Positions 4,601-64,000 are shown, counted from the first letter of the stretch. The stretch: 64,000 bases of DNA from Ylistrum balloti (GCF_031769215.1 NW_026782351.1:1-64000); one strand, 5' to 3'. A program made the numbers and translations. The notes: generated from the sequence alone by a model not told the origin.

Positions 4601-7600
4601 CGGTGCTGTAATCAGAAAATATTCTAACTATATTGTAAGCAAGGATTTTACATCATACAAATATACATCACATTATCAGTAATGCAGTTACATTTGTTTG
4701 CGACACATTCATTAACCTTGAAATACATTGGGTATACTGTGGAGTCTTATTGCCCTCGAAAGATTTATAATTGCCAAATGTGATCTGTGTTTCAACAGAT
4801 GATGCATGGCTTTCAAACTCTTTCTTGTATCTGTTCACCCACACTACATTCGTTGTTCATGAATTTAAAAACTTACTAGAAGCTGTGTACAGAGAAGTAT
4901 TGAGGTATGGTGATGACCTATTGTATGTCAGTCTATCATACCTACAGCTATGTACTAGAGAGGTATGGTGATATTCTACAGTAATTTCGTCTATCATTCC
5001 TTTTGCTGTGTACAGAGAAGTATTGAGGTATGGGAATGGTCTTTGTAATCTCATATTATTGATAATTTACTTACTTGACAAGACAGTAAGAAGGAATATG
5101 TAGTCAGAGAAGGAAATGAGGCCACTCTCCCCAAGCTGATAGAAGATGCTATCCTCTCCCATCTTCCATTCTGCTTTGTTGTGCTGGATATATCAAACAA
5201 AACATCAATAAGGAGCTCAAGTTAACACTAAAAGCCAGAACCACACATTCTAGTTTTACTGGATTTTCAGCATTATTCCAAAATCAAACTTCATTTAATT
5301 CTGAATTAAGCAGAAGTCTTGAATATGATAATGTGGAGAGGATGTAACATATAGCTTACCAGGTGAAAAATTATTTCATATTTCTCATTACTTGAGTCTA
5401 ATAATAATAATAAAAAAAATGTAAATAAATAAAATCATTTATGACATTATCACCCAGTCCTCTTTCTTGCACCTGTTGTTTTGGTGATGATTAGTTAAAA
5501 TACAGCAATACAACACTCTGTATGACAAACAATTTTCATGTCAAACAGATAGGTGAGGATTTGAGTGAGGGAAATATTTATAAGAAACAGTTATAACTTG
5601 TATTATGACACATGACTTTATGGAGGAGTCAGTATCAGTATGGTTTTCCCTATTTTGTTAACAAGGAACTGCGGTATAAAAAATCTGTATCACACATCAC
5701 ACAAAATTAATGGCTAGAGTACTACAAATGTTCTGATACGATACAATGTATGTAAATGTTACAGACAGTTCTTATAAAACAGGATAATAAAGAATTTAAC
5801 CGGACATATAATGTCATCTGGTAGTAATTGGGGAGAAGGTAAACACGAAGGGCAGTGAAGATTCAATCTGTAGGGCAGTGCAAATTAGGTATAACAATGA
5901 TAGAAAGAATCAAAGATGAAGGATAGAGAAGTCATTGTCTATACAAATGATAGTAGTCAGTCAGGTGAGATTTTGTGTTCGAAAGAGACTTGAAGTGTTT
6001 TGAATAAAAACTACAGTAGTTAATGTCTTGAAGTAGTCTAGAGAAGTGAGTGACTGAGAGAGGACTACAGTGGTTAATGTCTAGGTGTAGTCTTGAGGAG
6101 TAAGTGACTGAGAGAGGACTACAGTGGTTAATGTCTAGGTGTAGTCTTGAGGAGTGAGTGACTGAGAGAGGACTGCAGTGGAGTTAGAATCTGAGAGAGG
6201 ACACTGCAGTGGTTAATGTCTGGGTGTAGTCTAGAGGAGTAAGTGACTGAGAGAAGACTGCAGTGGAGTTAGAATCTGAGAGAGGACTGCAGTGGTTAAT
6301 GTCTGGGTGTAGTCTAGTGGAGTGAGTGAATGAGAGAGGACTGCAGTGGTTAGTGTCTGGGTGTAGTCTAGAGGAGTAATTGACTGAGAGAGGACTGCAG
6401 CGGAGTTAGAATCTGAGAGAGGACTGCAGTGGTTAAGTGTCTGGGGTATTCTAGAGGAGTGAGTCACCGAGAGAGGACTGCAGTGGTTAGTGTCTAGGTG
6501 TAGTCTAGTGAACTGAGCAACCGAGAGAGGACTACAGTAGTTAGTGTCTGGGGGTATTCTAGAGGAGTGAGTCACCATGAGAGAGGACTGCAGTGGTTAG
6601 TGTCTTGGGGTATTCTAGAGGAGCGAGTCACCAAGAGATCTGCAGTGGTAAGTGTCTAGGGGTATTCTAGAGGAGTGAGTCACCAAGTGGACTGCAGTGG
6701 TTAGTGTCTAGGGGTATTCTAGAGGAGTCAGCTACTGAGAGAGGACTGCAGTGGTAAGTATCTGGGTGTAGTCTAGAGGAGTGAGTCACTGAGAGAGGAC
6801 TGCAGTGAAGTAAGAGTCTAAGAGGGAACTGTTGTGGTTAGTGTCTTGGGTTGGTCTAAGGAAGTGAGAGTCAGAGAGGACTGCAGTGGTTAATGTTTAG
6901 GGTTAGTTTATAGAAGTGAGAGAGAGAACTGAAGTGTCTGGGGTAGTCTAGAGAGGCAAGTCTGCAAAAGGACTACAGCAGTTCATCTGGAGGTAGTCTA
7001 AAGAAGTGAGTAACTGAGAGAGGACTGCAGTAGTTAGTGTCTGGGGAGAGTCGAGAGAAGGGAGAGGATGTTGATTTATGAGGGTTGTCAAGAAGGGTGA
7101 GAGTATGAGAAAGGACTGCTTTAGTTAGAGTTTTGGGATAGTCTAAAAAAGTGAGTGACTGACTGAGATAGGACTGCTGTGGTTTTTGTCAGGGGGTAGT
7201 CTAGAGAAGTGAGTCAAAGATGACTTTTGTGGTGTAGTGTCAGGGGCTAGTGAATACAAGTGTCTGAAAGAGAATAGTGAAATTGTGACTTTATGAGTGT
7301 TAGAATCTATAGATATTTCTCTCAATATATACCATATGTTCACTGTGTCAAAGATATAGGGAAGAAGATCAGAGAATACCTGATACCTGTGATCTCTTTG
7401 ATACAAAATAAAAGTATGAAATGTAAACATAAAACAGCATGATGGAATAATCAATTGCATTTGATTGGACTATAAACAGGCAATTAAAAAAAACCGCTAT
7501 CAACCTTGAAAGTTTTTCAAGAACAATAAAAATGTCTTAATGTGAACTTTTAGATTTCACCATGATTATATCAGATATATTTCTGTGGTGCAAATAAAAC

Positions 7601-26389: not shown

Positions 26390-27423
26390 TTTTTTAGGTC
26401 ATAGGGTCGAGATGACCTATAGCCATCGTGCTTTGTCCGTCCTCCGCCGTGCGCCATCCGTAAACTTTTCATTCAAAAAACTTCTCAAATACTAGGAGGC
26501 TAATACTTGGCCCTTAGCATGCTGGGATGGAGCCCTACAAAGTCCATGAATGCTGATATCGGGTCTGTAGCATGTTGAGATGAAGGGCTACCAAGTTTGT
26601 TCAAATGAATGACCTTGACCCACTTTCAAGGTCACAGGGGTCAAATATGTTAAAATATACAAACGACTTCTTCTCAATAAGCAAAAGTCCAAGAGTGCTG
26701 ATATTGGGCCTGTAAGACGCTTGGAAGAAGGGCTACCAAGTTTGTTCAAATAAATGACCTCGACCCACTTTCTAGGTCACCAGGGTCAAATATGTTAATA
26801 TTTTAAAACAACTTCCCAACAACCAAAAGGCTCAGAATGCTGATATTGGGTCTGTAGCATGCTGGGATGAAGGGCTATCAAGTTTGTTCAAATGAATGAC
26901 CTTGACCCACTTTAAAGGCCACAGGGGTCAAATATGTGAAAATATATAAACGACTTCTTCTCAATAAGCAAAAGTCCAAGAGTGCTGATATTTGGCCTGT
27001 AGGATGCTGGGATGAAGGGCTACCAAGTTTATTCAAATAAATGACCTCGACCCACTTTCTAGGTTACAGGGGTCAAATATATTAAAATATACAAATGACT
27101 TCTTCTCAATAAGCAAAAGTCCAACAGTGCTGATAATGGACCTGTAGGATGCATGGATGACATGATACCAAGTTTGTTCAAATGAATGACCTTGGCCCAC
27201 TTTTAAGGTCACAGGGGTTAAATATGTTAAAATCTGTAAACGACTTCTTCTCAGTAACCAAAAGGCTCAGAGTGCTGATATTGGGCCTGTAGGATGCTGG
27301 GAGGAAGGGCTACTAAGTTTATTCAAATGAATAAAGCCAACTGTTTTAACAGCAGACACACAGTTGTTAAGAGTTTGGCTTGCTTTTTGTCAGATGATCG
27401 TTAAGGCCCATGGGCCTCTTGTT
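26390..27423 (+). mobile_element. HINE/Helentron-like non-autonomous element with central ~145-bp tandem array (about 5 copies)
   Basis: T-rich 5' end with subterminal palindrome aggtcat...atgacct, a gtcc-type microsatellite, repeat starts near 26571, 26716, 26858, 27003, 27148, 27293, and a 3' palindrome aggcccatgggcct followed by cttgtt. Confidence 0.8.
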
Positions 27424-34200: not shown

Positions 34201-35620
34201 TCTCTTACCAGGTATATTCTTCATGCTTTGATAGAAATATATTTGAGGGTTTTTTAAACGATTAAGAAAAAAACAGTTGATCTGCTTTGTTTTTTGTTTT
34301 TTTTTAAATTCCTCCATACAGCCATGTTTTCTAGGTTTAAGAAACAATATTTTCAGGTCCTAAAAATGCTTATCTTATATTTTAACCCTGACTGATATTT
34401 AAACCAACATAGGTAGATTGGTAAAAGAAAACCAGTGAGGAAACAAAGTTTCTGAATGCTACTATGTTTCTGTTAAGAAATTAACATTAATTTCCATTCA
34501 AGGTCAAATTTGTTTAAGCGTTTGAATGATTTTTTTTCTCTTAACAACATTAATATAGAGGAATGTAACAGTTACAGTCATCTGTATGGATACACTTATG
34601 TCTTTACCAGTTCAGTGGTAGATAGATGTAACAGTTACAGGCTTTTGTATAAATTGCCTTACCACTTCAGTGGTAGATAGATGTAACAGTTACAGTCATC
34701 TGTATGGATACACTTATGTATTTACCAGTTCAGTGGTAGATAGATGTAACAGTTACAGGCTTTTGTATAAATTGCCTTACCACGCAGTGGTAGATAGATG
34801 TAACAGTTACAGGCTTTGTATAAATTGCCTTACCACTTCAGTGGTAGATAGATGTAACAGTTAGTCATCTGTATGGATACACTTATGTCTTTACCAGTTC
34901 AGTGGTAGATAGATGTAACAGTTACAGTCATCTGTATGGATACACTTATGTCTTTACCAGTTCAGTGGTAGATAGATGTAACAGTTACAGGCTTTTGTGT
35001 AAATTGCCTTACCTCTTCAGTGGTAGATAGATGTAATAGTTACAGGCATCTGTATGGATACACTTATGTCTTTACCAGTTCAGTGGTAGATAGATGTAAC
35101 AGTTACAGTCATCTGTATGGATACACTTATGTCTTTACCAGTTCAGTGGTAGATAGATGTAACAGTTACAGTCATCTGTATGGATACACTTATGTCTTTA
35201 CCAGTTCAGTGGTAGATAGATGTAACAGTTACAGTCATCTGTATGGATACACTTATGTCTTTACCAGTTCAGTGGTAGATAGATGTAACAGTTACAGGCT
35301 TTTGTATAAATTGCCTTACCACTTCAGTGGTAGATAGATTTTAGTATGTATGTTGACTGTAAGCTGTAAAGAAACTGATGTCATGAACACCTATCTAACT
35401 GGATATTACTGTAAAACAATTATATCTTTTGTCTTACCAAAATATCCCATTCAGTATTTCTGTCATTATAACTGGTACAGTGAATTATTCTTCACTTTTT
35501 CAGTCAAAGAGTTTTGTGGAGTCGACACCACAGGTGGTGAAATCTGGTATCTCAAAAGATGAAGCAGAAAAATTGAAGGCAACATTGGAGGCTGTCGGAG
35601 CCTCTGTGGAAGTAATGTAG
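31236..35620 (+). CDS. MRPL12: Mitochondrial ribosomal protein L12 (bL12m), 188 aa
   Basis: Exons 31236-31306, 31669-31843, 32314-32385, 33585-33716, 35504-35620 (567 nt). Arg/Ser/Leu-rich presequence, [96 protein letters not shown]. An alternative in-frame ATG lies at 31248. Confidence 0.95.
32748..33458 (+). mobile_element. HINE/Helentron-like element in MRPL12 intron 3
   Basis: tttttaggtcatctga 5' end and inverted tcagatgacc near the 3' end (33420), degenerate internal repeats (gatttgacccc...), 3' ggccctcttgtt. Confidence 0.7.
34563..35339. repeat. Two-variant minisatellite, 13 units (63-bp A and 55-bp B) sharing a 28-bp core
   Basis: Core cagtggtagatagatgtaacagttacag followed by tcatctgtatggatacacttatgtctttaccagtt (A) or gcttttgtataaattgccttaccactt (B); order A B A B B A A B A A A A B. 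Confidence 0.95.
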
Positions 35621-53790: not shown

Positions 53791-56700
53791 TGTCGTTTAA
53801 AGACTTGAGAAGTAGGTGTTCCTTTTGATTAACATATGAAGCCAAATAGCTTTGTATTCTACTTACAAAGGAAAAGTGTTACATAGTAACTATATTTCAC
53901 TGGCGCCAGTGGCGGGCAGGCCTGAAAATTCTGACTTGTCAGGTCGGGCACTGCAGAAGAAGTCAGTCATGGGATTATATGTTGCCTTACAATCCTTTAA
54001 CCAAATGGTAGAATCTACTGCTAGAGTCTTTAAGAAGTTGAAGTTGAGAGTACATGTCGCCTTAATAACCCCGGCTACTGGAAGTTTTCTAACCAAGGGT
54101 TAGAGTACTTTTTTCTGTCTCGAAAATGAAATAAAAGTTAATGTTGACATTGTCATTTTACACACAGAAATCTATCACTGTTTTATCTAACTAGAGACAG
54201 AGGGTCAATAAATCAAACCCCATCAATTGCAGGGTATTTTCAACTCAATATAGTCTTTCGACATCAACAACTACATTAACAATGTTGGAGGTTCAACATG
54301 GATGGAAACTTTTGACAAGATTGGTCAATGGAATTGGATGGAATTAGATCTCTTTTAACTTTACGGGTAGTGGATTACATTTTGATTTATAGCTATTCAA
54401 GTGTATATATTGCTCAACTAGTTTTCCATTAGTAGCTATCAGGAACTGAAGAAAAGCAAGTTTTTCCAAGATAAAATTGCATATGCACAAAACAGAATTA
54501 CCAGAATTATATCAGAGTGCTTATAAACAACATCGAAAATACATACAATTTTTTTTTTTTAGGAATTAATTGAGTTAATTAAGTAGATACTCAATGCTCT
54601 ATTGTTTTAAATCAAAATTAACTGCAGTATATTAAGATATTATTGATAAACATCCCCAGTGAGTTTCAAGTCTCTTTCATGCATATGCATTTTTATCTGA
54701 AAAATAATTTTTTCTTTCATTTTGGTAAAATTGAAAACAGCTATTATAGCGATATCAAAATTAAACAGGAATAAACCAACATGAGCCCAACCTGCATGTC
54801 AAGTTGTCAACCTTAATCCATTAATATCTTGGATTGAAGCATGTAGATCAATGCTCTATTTTATCAAAGCCTTTAAATTCTGACCCATGTACCATATTGT
54901 TTTTTGTAATGAATTGATATACTCTGTCATTACAGAGTCATATTCAATGAAATGAATTAAAAATATCCTTGTGTAAACCTAGCTCAAATTTCCGTTGGTC
55001 CTCACACCAGACGTTGGACATTTGTTAAACATAAATAATCTCTCACTGCTGATATTTTGATAGAAATGTGTGGAAAGTTGGGCTAGTAGAATTTACTGTA
55101 TGACTTCAGTTAATTGTGTTCCTTGTCTCTTGTACGTACATGTAAATATGTAGGCAGCGTTGGCATTTATGTAATATGAATTGCTCTTTCAATGATTTAT
55201 TGCCAGATAACATATAACACTACCTTTTTAATCATCAGGAAAATATATAAGTAATATTTTATTATTAGATACCATATACCAGATATGTACATTATGTAAT
55301 AGGAAAGTGCAATGGGATGTGACCTGGATTCATATAATATATGTGCACACTGCATATATACAAGTAATTTGGAACCAAATCAGCTCCCAGGTCACTGGTA
55401 CAGAGTGGTGCCAAAAGTATTTGTGACTTTCAAGATGGCAGATGTAGATAGGAAACGATTAAACAATTAAAACTCAAATTAAATATGGGTATCTTCAATT
55501 CACTCTAACCTTCTATTTGGTGAGGTGATTGTGTATTTCTGCCAACAGATGATGGGGGATTGAATTACACAGTGAAAAATATAATCAGATCTCAATGGAA
55601 GCCAGATGTTAGAAATAATGGGCAAAGCGTCTTGTTGAGTCCTGATGTTCGGTACCCAATTTGGAAGAATCTGTTTGATCCACAGTTGTTAATTTTTGAT
55701 AATGTTAATATCAGGAAACTGGGCTGGCCTTGTGATGGTCAGAATATTCTTTTGCTTGTATTAAGTGTTAAGATGTGCTGATGGTCAGGGAAATTGTCAT
55801 CTTGGAAATGTTATGGACTGTCTGTTGGCTGAGTAGAAACATAAGCTAGCAATTCAACATCCCAATATGTTATTGGACATTGATATTACTTAGCTTATGA
55901 ATAGGGTCTGTCATCATCATGGAATTATATTCCACACCATAATAGATACATGTCAGTACTGGAGAGGATCTAGGCACTGGGGTTAGTGACCACTGATTTT
56001 CATCAGAAAATATTACAGTTTTCATTACTAGTCCTCGTAAAGCCGTCTTTTCTTTCCTGTTAATTTCTGATACCACATTTTCTTTCACTACTCAATGTTT
56101 CATATCATTGTTACATTTGTATTACAGATTTTACAGAGATGACCAGAGCTTTAGGGTACCCAAGATTAATATCTATGGAAAATTTTCGAACACCAAATTT
56201 CCCATTAGTTGCAGAAGTTTTAAAATGGCTGGTGAAAAGGTATAGTGTTTTATATATTTTTCTAACATGTACTACAAACACACAAATAAAGATTGAGGAG
56301 GAACATCTTGCATTGTTTCACGTAAAAAGGTAGATCTGACCAATGTTTCATTCTGTTAGAAACATTATCTTATCATTGAATAGCACAGTGATCTATGTGT
56401 TAGAAGTGTTATTTAAACATTTATTATATCCATGTACATGTAGTACAATTATGTTCATGTAATATATTTACAGGAAAATCAACTTACTTAACACTTTTTT
56501 GAAATCTGATATTGCAAGTGATAATTTTTACATAATCTGATTGCAATTTTGGATTGCGACAACTTTTCATCAATGATTTTTTTTTCTAGATATGACCCAA
56601 ATGCTGATGTTCAAGGAGATACTGACACTGAACAGGATAGAGTGATCTTTGTGAAGACTGTAGCAGAGTTTATGGTAAGTGACAAAATATTGTTAGCTTT

Positions 56701-59700
56701 GTAAAGTCTGAAGCCAAGTTTCAAGATAGAGTGATCTTTATAAAGTCTATAGCCAAGTGTCAGGATAGAGTGATCTTTATAAAGTCTATAGCCAAGTGTC
56801 AGGATAGAGTGATCTTTATAAAGTCTATAGCCAAGTGTCAGGATAGAGTGATCTTTATAAAGTCTATAGCCAAGTGTCAGGATAGAGTGATCTTTATAAA
56901 GTCTATAGCCAAGTGTCAGGATAGAGTGATCTTTATAAAGTCTATAGCCAAGTGTCAGGATAGTGATCTTCATAAAGTCAAATGTCAGTGATCTTAACAA
57001 ATTGTGGAACCAAGTGTCAGGATAGTGATCTTCATAAAGTCTGTAACCAAGTGTCATGATAGAATGATATTTACAAATTGTTGAACCAATTGTCAAGATG
57101 GAGTGATCTTTACAAAGTCTGTAACCAAGTGTCAGGATAGAGTGATCTTAACAAATTGTGGAACCAAGTGTCACGATAGAGTGATCTTTACAAAGTCTGT
57201 AACCAAGTGTCACGATAGAGTGATCTTTACAAAGTCTGTAACCAAGTGTTACGATAGAGTGATCTTTACAAAGTCTATAGCCAAGTGTCACGATAGAGTG
57301 ATCTTTACAAAGTCTGTAACCAAGTGTTAGGATAGAGTGATCTTTATAAAGTCTGTAACCAAGTGTCACGATAGAGTGATCTTTACAAAGTCTATAGCCA
57401 AGTGTCACGATAGAGTGATCTTTACAAAGTCTGTAACCAACCAATTGTCAAGTGTTATGATAAGTGATCTTTACAAAGATCTTTACAAAGTCTATAGCCA
57501 AGTGTTATGATAGAGTGATCTTTACAAAGTCTGTAACCAAGTGTCAGGATAGAGTGATCTTTATAAAGTTATACAAATTGTAAAGTCTAACCAAGTGTCT
57601 TTATAAAGTCTATAGCCAAGTGTAGATAAGTGATCTTGTACAAAGTCTGTAACCAAGTGTCACGATAGAGTGATCTTTACAAAGTCTGTAACCAAGTGTT
57701 ATGATAGAGTAATCGTAAAAGTCTGTAGACAAATATCAGCATATAGTGTCCTGTGTAAAATCTGTTGGCAAGTTTATGATAAGTGTCAGGGTAGAGTATC
57801 AGTAAGGTAATGTTTGTAGCAGAGTTACACATAAAAATCTCGCTAAATCACAATGTTATTGATGTGCATTATATCAGAATCTTACACTTGTTCTTATAGT
57901 TGATTTTGTAAACCATTTTGATTCTGACTTTATCATTTTAGGCAACCAAAGCTCACATCAAACTCAACACTAAAAAATTATACCAAGCAGATGGCTATGC
58001 TGTAAAGGAATTGTTGAAAGTAACGTCTGTTCTCTATAACGCCATGAAAACAAATGTAATAGATCAGCTGGAGAACCCAGAGGATGATGTTTCTCACCTG
58101 TCATTTGATGTCTCCTCCAGGGTAGGTCAGATAGATCAGTATGCTTCAATGTCTTCCCCATTGTGCATGTATATTGTATGTCAATCCAAAGCTAACTACA
58201 AAAGTTTTTCTATCAAAATCAATAAAATAGTAGATTATAATGTCATTGACTGTATGTCATAATGATAAAACCGAACAAGTTTTGATTTGGTAGAAATTGA
58301 AGAGATCTGAAGGCCATATGAAATTACTTAAAAAGTGAAGTTCGTAACTCTTCCAAAATTTGTTAAATCAAAATCTTATTGAGGAACACACTGCTTTATG
58401 CTATAGTGATTAGATATCTATGTCAAGTTTTAAAGAAAGTAGTGGAAAATACTGAAAGGAAAAAAAATTCTGACAAAGTTTTGAATGTTTAGGAAAAGCT
58501 AACCATTTATATACTTACTAAACTTTGTTGTATCCAAATCCTTTTCAGTAAACATTTTCATATTATAGTAATAAAACTCTCGAAGATTTGAAGATATCTG
58601 ATCTAAACTAATTAGAGAAGTTTCATGGATAGGATTAAAATGCATGAAATCAAAGGGAAATTACTCTTAAATCCTTGCTGAATCAAATGCTGTTCAGGAT
58701 AACACAATTCCATGTCAGAAATAAATAATACGAGGAAAACTCCAGGCAAGATTTAAGTCATATTACAAAAGATTAGCAAAAATCGAATAGCAATGAAATT
58801 ACCAAGTAGGAAAGCACAACTTCATGTCATAGTTATATAGCCTATCAAGTTTCAAAGAGATTGGTTGAAAACTGAGATCTCTCTTGAAAAACTATCAAAC
58901 AACACATATTTTCTATGGTAAGTAAAAAAGAAAATAGATAAATAAATACCATGTTGCACTGCCATGTCTCTTTTTGGGTATGTCACAAAAAAAAACAAAA
59001 AAAAATTTCAGCCTTTTCTTTCATTTCTTAGCAGGGGTAGGTGGCAGATATCTGTCTCCTTCAAGATAGGTCACAGCGTTTGATATAAAGAATTTGATGT
59101 AAACATAAATACAAATAAAAATGAATCCAGAAGCAAGTTAGGATAACTTATATGTATCCATAGAGACATGGTTAAAAGATGTTCAAGATTTTCATTTCTA
59201 GTTGGTAGAGTTGTTGTGTTCTCTTGATATAACTCATTAAATATGTTAAGCAGTTTAAGTATAAATCTAAGATAACATGCTCTTGTTTTACTTGCTGCAT
59301 CAGGGCAGTAAAACAGGTCTATGAGATAGATGTAGAGGCTGTCTGGCACAATATTGTATTTGAAGTGATATACGTATTAGACACAAAAACGTATGTATAA
59401 AAAGACTGCCAGAACAAAGAAGTGAAAATGTTAGTCGATAGTTTTGAGCACTCCATATATTACATGTATAATTGACACTTGTTTTAAATTAGATTAGTGA
59501 ACTGAAGGAAGCAAGAAGATTAGCATCAGAAATCACAACAAAGGGAGCTACGCTTTATGACCTGTTGGGTAGGGAGGTCGACCTCAGGGTAAGTTATTAT
59601 CATTTACTAGGGATGTCAGCAAGTATTCAAATAGGTACCCATTTGGTAGTATTTCAATAGGAAATTGACATTTGATTATTTATTTAAGCTGTTAATAACA

Positions 59701-62700
59701 TTTGTAAGATGGCTAAGATCTTCGACAAAGTTAGTTTTCATTCTAAATAGAACTTTGTCAGCTAAAACAGCTAAGTATAATTAGAGTTCAAAGTTTTCAC
59801 CTGTACAATTCATCATGACACTAATTAGTAAGAGTGTCTGAGGTCACCATAATCCAGGTTAGTGTCACATCTGATGTGCATGTTATTTTAATATAAGCTT
59901 TAATTTACATTTAGTTCGTGTGACATTGTTCTGAACTTGATAATGTTTCTAGAAGAATTCTTTCCTGCACATTTCTGTATCAAAATAATTCAAAATGATG
60001 CATTATAACTTTTGTATTATTTTAGTGACCCAACATAATCTTTAAGTGAAATAATTTATTCTATTTAAACTATACATCCCATTTGTAATCTGTACAACTG
60101 AAAGTGTAAACCTACAGAACTACAACATTTATTTTTTGGTAAATGTGATTCTGATGTCGAGAGAAACTAAACATCATGCTTTGTCTGTACCCAACAGGAA
60201 CAGAGATCAGTGGTTATTGCCAAATCTCTAGAGATCAATGAAGTAGAGAGTGGGATGGCCAACTCCATCAAGGCTGTTGAGGTAATGTATCCTACTATAA
60301 ACAATACATCTATTGACACAGTATGATTACTATAGGTGTATTGTACATAGCAATTATGTCTTAGCTGTGGACATTATCAATGTTCATGGAAATTATGTCT
60401 TAGCTGTGGACATTATCAATGTTCATGGAAATTATGTCTTAGCTGTGGACATTATCAATGTTCATGGAAATTATGTCTTAGCTGTGAACATGATCAATTA
60501 TGGCAATTATGTCTTTGCTGTGGACATTATCAGTTATCATGGCAATTATGTCTTAGCTGTGGACATAATCAGTTAACATGGCAATTATGTCTTAGCTGTG
60601 GACATTAACAATGTTCATGGCAATTATGTCTTAGCTGTGGACATTAACAATGTTCATGGCAATTATGTCTTAGCTGTGGACATTAACAATGTTCATGGTT
60701 ATTATGTCTTTGCTGTGGACATTAACAATGTTCATGGCAATTATGTCTTAGCTGTGGACATTAACAATGTTCATGGTTATTATGTCTTTGCTGTGGACAT
60801 TATCTGTGTTCATGACAATTATGTCTTAGCTGTGGACATTAACAATATTCATGGCAATTATGTCTTAGCTGTGGACATTAACAATGTTCATGGCAATTAT
60901 GTCTTAGCTGTGGACATTAACAATGTTCATGGCAATTATGTCTTAGCTGTGGACATTAACAATGTTCATGGTTATTATGTCTTTGCTGTGGACATTATCT
61001 GTGTTCATGACAATTATGTCTTAGCTGTGGACATTAACAATATTCATGGCAATTATGTCTTAGCTGTGGACATTAACAATGTTCATGGCAATTATGTCTT
61101 AGCTGTGGACATTAACAATGTTCATGGTTATTATGTCTTAGCTGTGGACATTAACAATGTTCATGGTTATTATGTCTTTGCTGTGGACATTATCAGTGTC
61201 CATGGCAATTATGTCTTAGCTGTGGACATTAACAATGTTCATGGCAATTATGTCTTAGCTGTGGACATTAACAATGTTCATGGTTATTATGTCTTTGCTG
61301 TGGACATTATCAGTGTTCATGGCAATTATGTCTTAGCTGTGGACATTAACAATGTTCATGGCAATTATGTCTTAGCTGTGGACATTAACAATGTTCATGG
61401 TTATTATGTCTTAGCTGTGGACATTATCAGTGCTTATGGTAATTATGTCTGACCTGGGTTACTATCATTGTTATGGTAATATGTTTTGGTAGTGGATTTT
61501 GTCAGTATTGTGGTTACTTTAATGGTTGATATGAATAATACTTTTGAGTTGGGATACATGGTTGAAATGATAAACCTTTGATAAATTCAATATGAAGGGC
61601 TCTTTTATGATTGTATTACAGGAACTGTATTTACGTAATATTGTATTTCCAGTAGACATTCAAATTGACTGTAACCACTTATTGACTGCATATCTCTGCT
61701 TCATGACATACAAATTTCAGAAGTCAGCTGTGAAATTTTAAACTTCCAACAAAATATGGTTACAATTAAGTTTAATAAAACATTGATGATTCCAACTTGA
61801 AATGACAAACAAAAAGGCTTCTGCATTAAAAAAGATAATATATTCTGGTCATATGTAATGTTATTAGCTTAAGCCTTGTTTAAATCTGTTTACGTTGACC
61901 CATCTACATGGTCATATGTGTCAGATTTATCTAAAGCTTTAAAAATCAAACTCACTGGTACATTGTACAACAGTATGTAGTATTGCTGGTTATTTGATTG
62001 ATACTGGCTAACTCTACGAGAAACAGTGGTGAATTCATATTTACATTTAAACCTGTCCATAGAGGCTACACTGGAGCAGAAGAAAAGTGGCCTTAGGCAA
62101 GTGACATTTATACAGAAGTTCAAATACTAATTTGTATTGAATGGGGACCTTTAACCAGTAGGCTTTATAGAGAGGTGTTTGTTATAAAGAGATAGCCTTT
62201 ATAGAAAGGTATCATAATTGTTAAATATAGGTGGCCTGGATATACAGGTATTTGTTATGTACAGGTGGTCTTTATGGGGAGTATTTTGATTTAGAGGTGT
62301 TTGTTATCAAGAGGTAGCCTTTATAGAAAGGTATCATAATTATTAAATATAGGTGGCCTGGATAGACAGGTATTTTTTATGTACAGGTGGTCCTTATAGG
62401 GAGTATTTTTATAAAGAGGCGGTCTTAAGGTATGTTTAGCTTTACTTATGTACCTTTGGCAGTGATTCATACATGCCATCTTCTACATGTCACATTTCTC
62501 AGCTCTACATCTTCATCAGTGGTATCCTAGCTTATCGGATATAGATACTGTTACCATTGTGATGAAAAGATGTGATTCATGTACTTACAGACATGCTATA
62601 AGATATGATTGATTTTAATAATGGTACTACAATGTTTATTGATACTTTTTTAGGCTGAGGTTAAGAAGACACTCCACATGTTAGACAATGTAGCATCGGA

Positions 62701-64000
62701 TGAGGCCAATCTGGAGGCCAAGATTGATAAAAAGAGGAATGAACTGGAGAGAAACAATAAGAGGTTACAGACTCTGCAGAGTGTACGACCTGCTTACATG
62801 GACGAGTATGAGAAACTGGAGGAGGACCTACAGAAGTTATATGAGGTCTACATGAACAAATTCAGGAATCTCACATACCTAGAATCACAACTAGAAGATT
62901 ACAATAGAGCAGAGCAAGATAGATTTGAGGTAAGGGCAGGATAAAATTCAGTTTTATGTAAGAAAGATGTAAAACCAGAGCAGTATAAAACTTGAGGTAA
63001 ACAAGGTGTAATATTAGAGCAGAGGAAAACTGAGAGCTTAACAAATTGTAATATTAGAGCAGAGTAAAACTGAGTTAGAGGTTAACAAGAAGTAGTATTA
63101 GAGCAGGGAAAAATAATTTAGAGGTTAACAAGAAGGTTAAATATAAAAGCAGAGTAAAACTGAATTAGAGGTTAACAAGGTGTAATATTAGAGCAGAGTA
63201 AAACTGAATTAGAGGTTAACAAGAAGTAGTATTAGAGCAGAGTAAAACTGAGTTAGAGGTTAACAAGAAGTAGTATTAGAGCAGAGTAAAACTGAGTTAG
63301 AGGTTAACAAGGTGTAATATTAGAGCAGAGTAAAACTGAGTTAGAGGTTAACAAGAAGTAGTATTAGAGCAGAGTAAAACTGAGTTAGAGGTTAACAAGA
63401 AGTAGTATTAGAGCAGAGTAAAACTGAGTTAGAGGTTAACAAGGTGTAATATTAGAGCAGAGTAAAACTGAATTAGAGGTTAACAAGAAATAGTATTAGA
63501 GCAGAGTAAAACTGAGTTAGAGGTTAACAAGGTGTAATATTAGAGCAGAGTAAAACTGAATTAGAGGTTAACAAGAAATAGTATTAGAGCAGAGTAAAAC
63601 TGAGTTAGAGGTTAACAAGAAGTAGTATTAGAGCAGAGTAAAACTGAGTTAGAGGTTAACAAGAAGTAGTATTAGAGCAGAGTAAAACTGAGTTAGAGGT
63701 TAACAAGAAGTAGTATTAGAGCAGAGTAAAACTGAGTTAGAGGTTAACAAGAAGTAGTATTAGAGCAGAGTAAAACTGAGTTAGAGGTTAACAAGAAGTA
63801 GTATTAGAGCAGAGTAAAACTGAGTTAGAGGTTAACAAGAAGTAGTATTAGAGCAGGGTAAAACAGAGTTTTAGGGGAGAAAGCTTGACATCAGTTTGTT
63901 GTTTTAGTGAATGATTATGAATCATGGTATGTGTGATCTTGACATTTGAGAGGGAAATTGGTTGTTATAGGAAACTGAGGAGAAGCTTAAGCAAATGGCT
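53790..64000 (+). CDS. CLUAP1: Clusterin-associated protein 1 / IFT38 (intraflagellar transport complex B); 3'-partial
   Basis: Exons 53790-53811, 56128-56239, 56590-56674, 57942-58121, 59493-59588, 60198-60281, 62654-62929, 63971-64000 (cut by window edge). Translation [32 protein letters not shown]...EQDRVIF...[26 protein letters not shown]...[13 protein letters not shown]...[13 protein letters not shown]...[16 protein letters not shown]. Confidence 0.96.
55399..56090 (-). pseudogene. Decayed Tc1-family (DD34E-type) transposase fragment with one TIR, in CLUAP1 intron 1
   Basis: Minus-strand motifs KTVIFSDE (about 56000-56020), FQDDNFPDH (about 55780-55808), [13 protein letters not shown] (about 55692-55730) and C-terminal SIPHHL...TK, interrupted by stops and frameshifts. 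TA|CAGAGTGGTGCCAAAAGTATTTG at 55399 resembles Tc1 TIRs. Confidence 0.8.
56696..57790 (+). repeat. 39-bp minisatellite derived from the 3' end of CLUAP1 exon 3
   Basis: Unit caggatagagtgatctttataaagtctatagccaagtgt; its first 32 nt match exon positions 56633-56664 at 28/32; more than 20 copies, degenerating to the right. Confidence 0.95.
60340..61452 (+). repeat. 39-bp minisatellite (about 28 copies) in CLUAP1 intron 6
   Basis: Unit gacattaacaatgttcatggcaattatgtcttagctgtg; a 5-unit (195-bp) higher-order duplication is visible at 60781 and 60976. Confidence 0.95.
62140..62440. mobile_element. Degenerate duplicated ~125-bp block with agaggtggtctttatag-type subrepeats (probable DNA-transposon fragment)
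   Basis: agaggtgtttgttat...agcctttatagaaaggtatcataatt...aggtggcctggata occurs at about 62168 and 62294. Confidence 0.45.
62975..63872 (+). repeat. 44-bp minisatellite (about 20 copies) resembling the 3' end of CLUAP1 exon 7 plus its donor
   Basis: Unit tattagagcagagtaaaactgagttagaggttaacaagaagtag (variant ...aacaaggtgtaa); exon end reads aatagagcagagcaagatagatttgag|gtaagg. Confidence 0.95.

What the first reader, a model, noticed from the sequence alone, without database searches (positions are those of the whole stretch)
62902..63872. Exon echo 2: CLUAP1 intron-7 44-bp minisatellite copies the exon end and donor site
Seen: exon/donor TAGAGCAGAG-CAAGATAGATTT-GAG|GTAAG versus unit TAGAGCAGAG-TAAAACTGAGTTA-GAG-GTTAAC (10/10, then 7/12, then GAG-GT). 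The array starts about 45 nt after the donor. The first copies (62975-63050) are transitional forms, and one retains GAG|GTAAA. About 20 copies each carry a weak AG|GT pseudo-donor. Inference: same origin as the intron-3 array, and the copies could act as decoy 5' splice sites.
Basis: partly seen in the sequence, partly recalled or inferred. Interest (0 to 1): 0.7.

Follow-up and report, generated by a model that had tools for sequence, protein, structure and literature searches.

The report
Splice-donor echo minisatellite in CLUAP1
About nine-tenths of one intron of the cilia gene CLUAP1 is a 44-base tandem repeat that probably grew from a duplicated copy of the preceding exon's end plus its splice signal; this kind of repeat is already known, and this one is probably a harmless by-product.

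Summary
A 44-bp x 20 minisatellite (62994-63870) lies in the CLUAP1 intron after the exon ending at 62929. Its unit matches the exon end as described: 10/10, then 7/12, then GAGGT. The unit occurs nowhere else in the 648.5-Mb genome.

Support for an exon/donor origin is moderate. The whole array against dinucleotide-shuffled exon ends gives p about 0.01-0.02. Against real genomic background the figure is 4e-5 to 4e-4. Edge copy 62976-63014 aligns 20/25 to the exon/donor (p about 0.002, uncorrected).

A profile of the unit shows the array reaches the donor (intron +5) and fills 91% of the 1041-nt intron. The donor motif decays stepwise away from the exon: GTAAGG, GTAAGA, GTAAAC, then 18 x GTTAAC. 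Six other taxa keep the same exon end and donor without this unit, so the exon is the source.

The decoy-donor idea is not supported. The canonical pseudo-donors are weak (predicted U1 pairing -4.2 versus -10.1 kcal/mol). Any use of them would hit an in-frame TAA at 62942. No RNA run could be obtained.

This is a new member of a known kind (amphioxus "mirages", human F7 IVS7, IFI6, CBS). The scan has noted the same kind before, in this window (intron 3) and on other pieces of this genome.

The parts
62654..62929 (+).
   Evidence: Pfam PF10234, E 6.8e-36. Exon-by-exon Pfam hits in the genome lie only on this contig. The same exon end and donor position occur in six other taxa.
62905..62931 (+). 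Source segment: last 25 nt of the exon plus the donor GT, which aligns to unit positions 1-28
   Evidence: Smith-Waterman alignment. nhmmer hit at 62903-62931 to profile positions 43-72, E 2.3 in 128 kb, fourth-best hit. Whole-array test p 0.008-0.024.
62930..63970 (+). Intron, 1041 nt: donor GAG|GTAAGG, acceptor ...TTATAG|G
   Evidence: Sequence. The reading frame continues into a conserved next exon, [10 protein letters not shown]....
62942..62944 (+). In-frame TAA stop, five codons into the intron
   Evidence: ORF 62678-62944 ends ...FEVRAG*. Any downstream pseudo-donor would therefore give a premature stop.
62932..62975 (+). Degenerate copy -1, 28/44 ungapped matches to the unit by my own count from the, 46 alignments; carries TAT|GTAAGA at 62958
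   Evidence: nhmmer alignment 62934-63013, E 1.6e-5. Multiple alignment.
62976..63014 (+). Transitional copy 0 (39 nt), which keeps TTGAGGTAA, identical to the exon/donor 9-mer; pseudo-donor GAG|GTAAAC at 62997
   Evidence: 20/25 alignment to the exon/donor, p 0.001-0.003 against shuffles. Predicted U1 pairing -6.9 kcal/mol.
63015..63054 (+). Transitional copy 1 (40 nt); donor motif already lost (AGCTTAAC)
63055..63848 (+). 18 full copies of 44-46 nt. Ten are identical, and the last six are an identical run. Each carries GAG|GTTAAC; copy 63099 additionally carries AAG|GTTAAA.
   Evidence: TRF, copy classes, pattern search, GT inventory.
63849..63875 (+). Truncated, diverged last copy; end of the array
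63971..64000 (+). Start of the next CLUAP1 exon, which runs to contig position 64058, outside the window
   Evidence: Matches the next exon of the orthologue in L031.

Best explanation
This is an exon-intron boundary minisatellite of the "mirage" / F7-IVS7 type.

Inferred history: a segment of about 43-44 nt straddling the 5' splice site was duplicated in tandem. It comprised the last 25 nt of the exon, coding ..RAEQDRFE, plus the first nucleotides of the intron. Because the first, authentic donor sits in its normal exon context, the extra copies fell inside the intron and were tolerated. Unequal exchange or replication slippage then amplified and homogenised them to about 21 copies. A short intron of roughly 100 nt thereby grew to 1041 nt.

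The inner copies lost the donor consensus (GTAAG became GTTAAC), either by drift or under selection against competing sites. The copies next to the exon escaped homogenisation and keep intermediate states. The most recent growth is at the 3' side.

The array most likely has no function. Splicing runs from 62929 to 63971, and the copies are silent.

Shown here: the array, its uniqueness to this locus, its reach to the donor, its similarity to the exon end, the motif gradient, and the age of the exon end. Inferred: the duplication history, neutrality, and silence of the pseudo-donors.
For: - Array and register.
- The unit is confined to this locus in 648.5 Mb: the DNA search hits only the array, and a 32-mer with up to 3 mismatches gives 17 of 17 hits inside it with 0 controls.
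- The profile of the unit aligns from intron +5 onward, E 1.6e-5. The exon end is the fourth-best hit in 128 kb and lies directly beside the array.
- Exon end versus consensus scores SW 24, shuffle p about 0.03. Whole array versus shuffled exon end gives p 0.008-0.024; four other exon ends of the gene score 14-18 against 27 here. Only 4e-5 to 4e-4 of genomic windows score as high.
- Copy 0 aligns 20/25 to the exon/donor, including a 9/9 TTGAGGTAA, p about 0.002. Copy 3 gives p about 0.001.
- The donor motif forms a graded series away from the exon, read: GTAAGG, GTAAGA, GTAAAC, CTTAAC, GTTAAC.
- Six other taxa have the same exon end (..EQDKFE|GT) without this unit, so the exon sequence is older than the array.
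- A control in the same gene, the intron-3 array, is an unmistakable exon echo: SW 37, 0 of 2000 shuffles, nhmmer E 4e-5.
- Contigs of four DNA runs from two studies reproduce the exon end, the donor and the transitional copies up to 63076, and the 3' edge from 63829.
- Precedents: PMC3087553 and PMC1557585.
Against: - Statistical support is modest when composition is matched: p about 0.02. With the exon's 40 nt alone, without the GT, it is only 0.04-0.09. Array and exon are both purine-rich.
- The nhmmer E-value for the exon end is 2.3 in 128 kb. It is significant only because the place was specified beforehand.
- The register is not clean. The exon copy is followed by the next copy after 27 nt, not 44, so a deletion of about 17 nt or a more complex history must be assumed.
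- The third array of the gene (intron 6) also lies close behind a donor but shows no echo, p about 0.65. Nearness to a donor therefore does not prove exon origin.
- No RNA evidence for which donor is used. No close relative was available to show the pre-array intron.
Confidence: 0.72

Rival explanations
1. An ordinary intronic minisatellite that arose from purely intronic sequence starting at intron +3. Its likeness to the exon end would be coincidence, helped by shared purine-rich composition and by the AGGT that any donor supplies.
For: - Composition-matched p is only about 0.02, and 0.04-0.09 for the exon alone.
- Copy -1 (62932-62975) is wholly intronic and in register with the array.
- The intron-6 array of the same gene and the 34-bp arrays of two other taxa sit right behind donors without any exon echo.
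- A likeness I saw by eye at the 6010 array vanished on testing, p 0.9.
Against: - The match is collinear and correctly spaced: a 10-mer, then GAGGT 12-13 nt later.
- Edge copies 0 and 3 are more exon-like than the consensus at the positions where they differ.
- The ancestral unit evidently carried TTGAGGTAA, identical to the real junction.
- The other exon ends of the gene score at the null mean.
- The same gene holds a proven echo.
Confidence: 0.2
2. A functional array. The repeated weak AG|GT sites or the purine-rich units would act in the pre-mRNA as decoy U1 sites, or as an intronic enhancer or silencer, tuning the use of the authentic donor or the output of CLUAP1.
For: - 20 AG|GT sites lie in phase.
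- The sense strand is 70% purine and 7% C, a composition typical of protein-binding RNA.
- Three introns of this gene carry arrays just behind donors.
- Copies are highly homogeneous.
Against: - Canonical sites match the 5' splice-site consensus CAG|GTAAGT at 5 of 9 positions, with T at +3 and A at +5. Predicted U1 pairing is -4.2 against -10.1 kcal/mol.
- Any use would meet the TAA at 62942.
- Homogeneity is what unequal exchange produces without selection.
- Six other taxa splice the same junction without such an array.
- In F7, even identical pseudo-sites do not compete (PMC1557585).
- No Rfam family matches 56000-64000.
Confidence: 0.06
3. A satellite carried in by a transposable element, or an assembly artefact.
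For: This genome is rich in minisatellites: TRF gives 26 rows in 64 kb. Short-read contigs break inside the array, so its length is not independently confirmed.
Against: The unit occurs at no other locus. Both edges of the array are reproduced in four runs from two studies. I saw no terminal repeats or transposase ORF in the flanks I read, but ran no inverted-repeat search.
Confidence: 0.02

Closest known systems
Human F7 intron 7 (IVS7) 37-bp VNTR (PMC1557585)
   Same: A minisatellite whose first monomer spans the exon-intron boundary, so the donor is reiterated downstream. Only the most upstream site is used in normal conditions. By coincidence it is also the seventh intron.
   Different: - In F7 the monomer holds only 4 nt of exon, and the 4-8 pseudo-sites are identical to the real site and functional if unmasked.
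- Here about 25 nt of exon are echoed and there are about 21 copies.
- Here the pseudo-sites have decayed to GTTAAC.
- Usage is untested here.
Amphioxus "mirages" (Adh3 and globin genes BflGb6/BflGb9; PMC3087553, which cites the original Adh3 paper)
   Same: Tandem, minisatellite-like duplications of an exon-intron boundary. Many but not all copies keep AG/GT. Regular splicing is undisturbed. Inner copies are homogenised while the edges are excluded from homogenisation.
   Different: - The globin mirages have 150-160-bp units in 3-6 copies at 81-100% identity, with an obvious exon part.
- Here the unit is 44 bp in about 21 copies.
- Here the exon part has drifted to about 75% identity, so homology is only moderately supported.
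- The host is a different phylum; earlier notes of this scan call it a scallop, which I did not verify.
Human IFI6 (6-16) intron 2 and CBS intron 13 boundary minisatellites (as summarised in PMC1557585)
   Same: The donor site is reiterated by a boundary minisatellite with many copies (25 pseudo-sites in 6-16; 15-20 repeats in CBS).
   Different: [quoted passage not shown] Here the proximal sites (62958, 62997) are weaker than the authentic site and would give a premature stop. No RNA data.
The 39-bp array in CLUAP1 intron 3 of this same window (56697-57748)
   Same: Same gene, same strand and same layout: the array begins just behind a donor and echoes the exon end.
   Different: The unit is unrelated in sequence. 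Its echo is far clearer: an 18-nt exact run by my reading, SW 37 with 0 of 2000 shuffles, and nhmmer E 4e-5 against 2.3 here. Its copies have lost the GT altogether.

Membership tests
Exon-intron boundary minisatellite ("mirage" / F7-IVS7 type) | A tandem array with minisatellite-sized units lying in an intron and abutting the splice junction | tested here: met
   TRF: period 44, 20 copies. The profile alignment reaches 62934, intron +5. The array fills 91% of the intron.
Exon-intron boundary minisatellite ("mirage" / F7-IVS7 type) | The first monomer spans the boundary: the unit is homologous to the exon end plus the splice signal | tested here: met
   Met at moderate strength only. Collinear match of 10/10, 7/12, then GAGGT. 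Shuffle p 0.008-0.03. Genomic-background fraction 4e-5 to 4e-4. Copy 0 aligns 20/25, p about 0.002. The register has a 17-nt shortfall between the exon copy and copy 0.
Exon-intron boundary minisatellite ("mirage" / F7-IVS7 type) | The splice signal is reiterated in the copies | tested here: met
   20 AG|GT sites in phase, but degenerate: 18 are GAG|GTTAAC, and only 62958 (GTAAGA) and 62997 (GTAAAC) stay donor-like. PMC3087553 says that many, but not all, mirage copies keep the signal.
Exon-intron boundary minisatellite ("mirage" / F7-IVS7 type) | The exon sequence predates the array (direction exon to array) | tested here: met
   Six other taxa have ..[NY]R[AVST]EQDKFE|GT at the same place without the 44-bp unit.
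Exon-intron boundary minisatellite ("mirage" / F7-IVS7 type) | Normal splicing from the most upstream site; the copies are silent or rarely used | not testable with these tools
There is only an indirect argument from frame and conservation of the next exon.
Exon-intron boundary minisatellite ("mirage" / F7-IVS7 type) | Length instability or allelic variation | tested here: inconclusive
   Short-read contigs break inside the array. Runs X1 and X2 carry a 176-nt contig with 11 differences at 63176-63224 that X4 and X5 lack. This could be an allelic copy order or a graph artefact.
Dispersed (transposon-borne) satellite | The same unit at unrelated loci | tested here: not met
   All hits lie inside the array.
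Functional decoy 5' splice-site array | Repeats carry near-consensus 5' splice sites able to bind U1 | tested here: not met
   Canonical sites match the 5' splice-site consensus CAG|GTAAGT at 5 of 9 positions, with predicted U1 pairing of -4.2 kcal/mol. Five authentic donors of this gene give -8.0 to -10.1.

The most novel reading that the evidence does not exclude
Donor-anchored minisatellites in this genome would not be rare accidents that selection merely tolerates. They would come from a process tied to 5' splice sites, for example breakage or template switching at transcribed, U1-bound or R-loop-prone exon ends. CLUAP1 would be a hotspot: three of its introns carry arrays starting 3-60 nt behind donors, and two of these echo the exon. 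Such a process would be a major route of intron growth in this lineage.
Probability: 0.1. Interest if true: 0.65.

Novelty: new member of a known kind. Interest (0 to 1): 0.25.

Why it matters
Taken alone it matters little. It is one more boundary minisatellite, of a kind described in amphioxus and in several human genes.

- It shows how a short intron can grow about tenfold by tandem copying of its own splice junction.
- It gives an older, more decayed example next to a younger one in the same gene. This suggests a life cycle: duplication, amplification, then loss of the reiterated donor.
- If such arrays are as frequent in this genome as earlier notes of this scan say, the species would be a good system in which to ask why donors rather than acceptors are echoed. 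My inference is that an extra donor downstream of the real one is harmless, whereas an extra acceptor upstream of the real one would be used.
- The same system would allow first-site rules of 5' splice-site choice to be tested outside mammals.

Tried and rejected
- RNA evidence: the one run search returned only DNA contig runs, so pseudo-donor use could not be tested.
- Laying four DNA runs confirmed the edges but cannot size the array.
- Close relatives: the word search with the exon ORF found no protein above 72% identity over its full length. Only distant orthologous introns could be compared.
- I suspected that two of those taxa have an independent exon echo at the same junction. Their 34-bp arrays start at intron +9 but do not resemble the exon, p 0.45-0.96. 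Rejected.
- I suspected by eye that the 54-bp array at 6010-6922 echoes an upstream GT site. Shuffle p was 0.9 and there is no open frame. Rejected.
- The intron-6 array shows no echo.
- Transposon or satellite origin is rejected.
- Known RNA families: none in 56000-64000.
- I did not use the large representative-protein search.
All protein work was done exon by exon, by reference.
- The donor coordinates I used for the control arrays were 1-2 nt off (the exons end at 56674 and 60281). This does not affect 50-nt targets.

Full report
WHAT IS THERE

The window is contig C494, positions 1-64000, of a 648.5-Mb assembly. The + strand carries CLUAP1. Pfam PF10234 matches exon by exon at 56145-56246, 56582-56680, 57933-58163, 59484-59594 and 62651-62920, and nowhere else in the genome.

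The exon of interest (62654-62929) translates to EVKK...NRAEQDRFE and matches profile positions 180-267 of 268 with E 6.8e-36. It ends GAG|GTAAGG. The next exon starts at 63971 behind TTATAG and continues the conserved protein ([10 protein letters not shown]...). This agrees with the orthologous next exon in another taxon.

THE ARRAY

TRF reports 62994-63870: period 44, 20.0 copies, 91% matches.

- In register, full copies start at 63055, 63099 and 63145, then every 44 nt to 63805.
- Two shortened copies lie at 62976 (39 nt) and 63015 (40 nt). A truncated copy lies at 63849.
- Ten copies are identical, including an unbroken run of six at the 3' end.
- Two minority unit types alternate in the middle. 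This is the pattern left by block-wise unequal exchange, with recent growth on the distal side.
- A profile HMM built from 14 dimers, searched against the window with 63015-63900 masked, aligns continuously from 62934 to 63013 (E 1.6e-5). A further degenerate copy therefore occupies 62932-62975 (28/44 ungapped matches by my count), and the periodic structure begins at intron +3 to +5.
- The array fills 91% of the intron. Only about 95 nt, holding the acceptor region, lie outside it.

IS THE LIKENESS TO THE EXON END MORE THAN CHANCE?

Its strength depends on the null model.

- Dinucleotide shuffles of the exon end or of the unit: p about 0.03.
- The whole array as query, so that any copy and any phase may match: p 0.008-0.024 with the donor included, and 0.04-0.09 for the 40 exon bases alone. 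Four other exon ends of the same gene score 14-18, at or below the null mean, against 27 here.
- All 50-nt windows of the 64 kb on both strands: only 4e-5 to 4e-4 reach the observed score.
- nhmmer ranks the exon end fourth in 128 kb (E 2.3). That is meaningful only because the place was named in advance.

The gap between the nulls is explained by composition. The array is 70% purine and 7% C, and the last 60 nt of the exon are 62% purine.

Two controls show that the test discriminates. The intron-3 array of the same gene gives SW 37 with 0 of 2000 shuffles and an exon hit at E 4e-5. The intron-6 array gives nothing, p about 0.65.

EVIDENCE BEYOND THE CONSENSUS

The copies nearest the exon, which escape homogenisation, are more exon-like.

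- Copy 0 (62976-63014) aligns 20/25 to the exon/donor, including the exact 9-mer TTGAGGTAA (p 0.001-0.003, uncorrected for choosing among about five distinct edge copies).
- Copy 3 keeps exon states in the middle part that the consensus has lost, p about 0.001.
- The donor motif changes stepwise with distance: GAG|GTAAGG (62930), TAT|GTAAGA (62958), GAG|GTAAAC (62997), AGCTTAAC (copy 1), then GAG|GTTAAC in 18 copies.

The direction is clear. Six other taxa, reached through exon-sized ORFs in public contigs, have ..EQDKFE|GT at the same position. Some have nearly the same nucleotides, and none has the 44-bp unit. The exon end is therefore old and constrained, and the array is the derivative.

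The unit is confined to this locus. The DNA search hits only the array. A 32-mer with up to three mismatches gives 17 of 17 hits inside it and none for the reversed control.

One wrinkle remains. The exon copy is followed by the next copy after 27 nt rather than 44, so a 17-nt loss or a more complex start must be assumed.

Taking the proven echo in the same gene as a prior, I put the exon/donor origin at roughly 80-85%. I put the full explanation, including neutrality, at about 0.7.

IS IT REAL DNA?

Contigs of four runs from two studies cover 61383 (or later starts) to 63076 with no difference in the exon end, the donor or the transitional copies. They resume at 63829. The interior collapses in short-read contigs, so copy number is not independently confirmed. 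Runs X1 and X2 hold a 176-nt contig with 11 differences at 63176-63224 that X4 and X5 lack. This may be an allelic arrangement of copies or a graph artefact.

DO THE COPIES ACT AS DECOY DONORS?

This rests on sequence alone.

Predicted pairing with the conserved U1 5' end (kcal/mol):

- Five authentic donors of this gene: -8.0 to -10.1, with 6-7 of 9 consensus matches.
- Canonical GAG|GTTAAC: -4.2, with 5 of 9 matches, T at +3 and A at +5.
- AAG|GTGTAA (five copies): -5.2.
- 62958: -4.3.
- 62997: -6.9.

The frame runs into TAA at 62942-62944, so every downstream site would give a premature stop.

[quoted passage not shown] By analogy, which is an inference, only 62958 and 62997 could matter here, and only weakly. 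A decoy function for the bulk of the array is unlikely.

WHAT IT IS

[quoted passage not shown] There, many but not all copies keep AG/GT, normal splicing is undisturbed, inner copies are homogenised and edge copies are not (PMC3087553). The human genes F7, IFI6, CBS, LMNB2 and PDGF are listed in PMC1557585.

This example differs by degree:

- A longer exon part (about 25 nt) than in F7.
- Many copies.
- An advanced state of decay of both the exon likeness (about 75%) and the donor.

No Rfam family matches the region.

I checked both papers myself. Other notes report the same kind of array on other pieces of this genome and call it a scallop. I did not test those claims and do not count them as evidence.

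WHY DONORS

This is inference. A duplicate donor lies downstream of the real one and is ignored, so the duplication is neutral. A duplicate acceptor would lie upstream of the real one and would be used, so such duplications are removed. That filter alone could explain arrays hanging on donors, without any special mechanism. The alternative is a process that creates duplications at 5' splice sites. It is my "novel case", at about 10%.

VERDICT

The origin claim is supported at moderate strength. The decoy claim is unsupported. This is a new member of a known kind, and its interest is low to moderate.

Noticed in passing
window 60342-61450: A 39-bp x 28.5 array (91% matches) starts about 60 nt behind the donor of the preceding CLUAP1 exon (GAG|GTAATG at 60281|60282). 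It shows no likeness to that exon end: shuffle p about 0.65, and no nhmmer hit beyond its own edge at 60342. So it is a donor-proximal array that is not an exon echo.
   Followed up: yes
window 56633-57790: The 39-bp array of CLUAP1 intron 3 is a clear copy of its exon end: an 18-nt exact run, SW 37 with 0 of 2000 shuffles, and an nhmmer exon hit at E 4e-5. Its copies have lost the GT altogether (CAG|GATAGA). This is a separate finding of the scan; I used it here as a positive control.
   Followed up: partly
L031:3226-3365 and L028:3352-3492 (public contigs of two related taxa, 82% protein identity in the exon): The orthologous intron begins with a different array, 34 bp x 3.6-3.8, starting about 9 nt behind the same donor (GAG|GTAAAGG). 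It has no significant likeness to the exon end (p 0.45-0.96). Four further taxa have no array there.
   Followed up: yes
window 62654-62929 versus L028, L031, L034, L035, L036: In the other taxa the exon is split by an extra intron just before ..RPAYMDEY... In this genome, and in the source of P0001-P0004, the exon is continuous. This is an intron gain or loss in CLUAP1.
   Followed up: no
window 63176-63224 (L026:3777-3825): Runs X1 and X2 carry a 176-nt contig with 11 base differences inside the proximal copies, while X4 and X5 match the reference. This is either an allelic order of unit variants or an assembly-graph artefact.
   Followed up: partly
window 6010-6922: A complex 54/85/137-bp array whose units each contain GTGAGT- or GTAAGT-like motifs. 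A test against the nearest upstream GT site (5965) gave no echo (p 0.9), and no open frame ends there.
   Followed up: partly
window 62164-62419: A 122-bp x 2.1 direct repeat (90% matches) lies in the same intron 6, downstream of the 39-bp array.
   Followed up: no
window 26539-27332 and 34563-35307: Two further large arrays: 145/287 bp x 5.5, and 63/118 bp x 12. Neither has an obvious exon beside it, and their nature was not examined.
   Followed up: no
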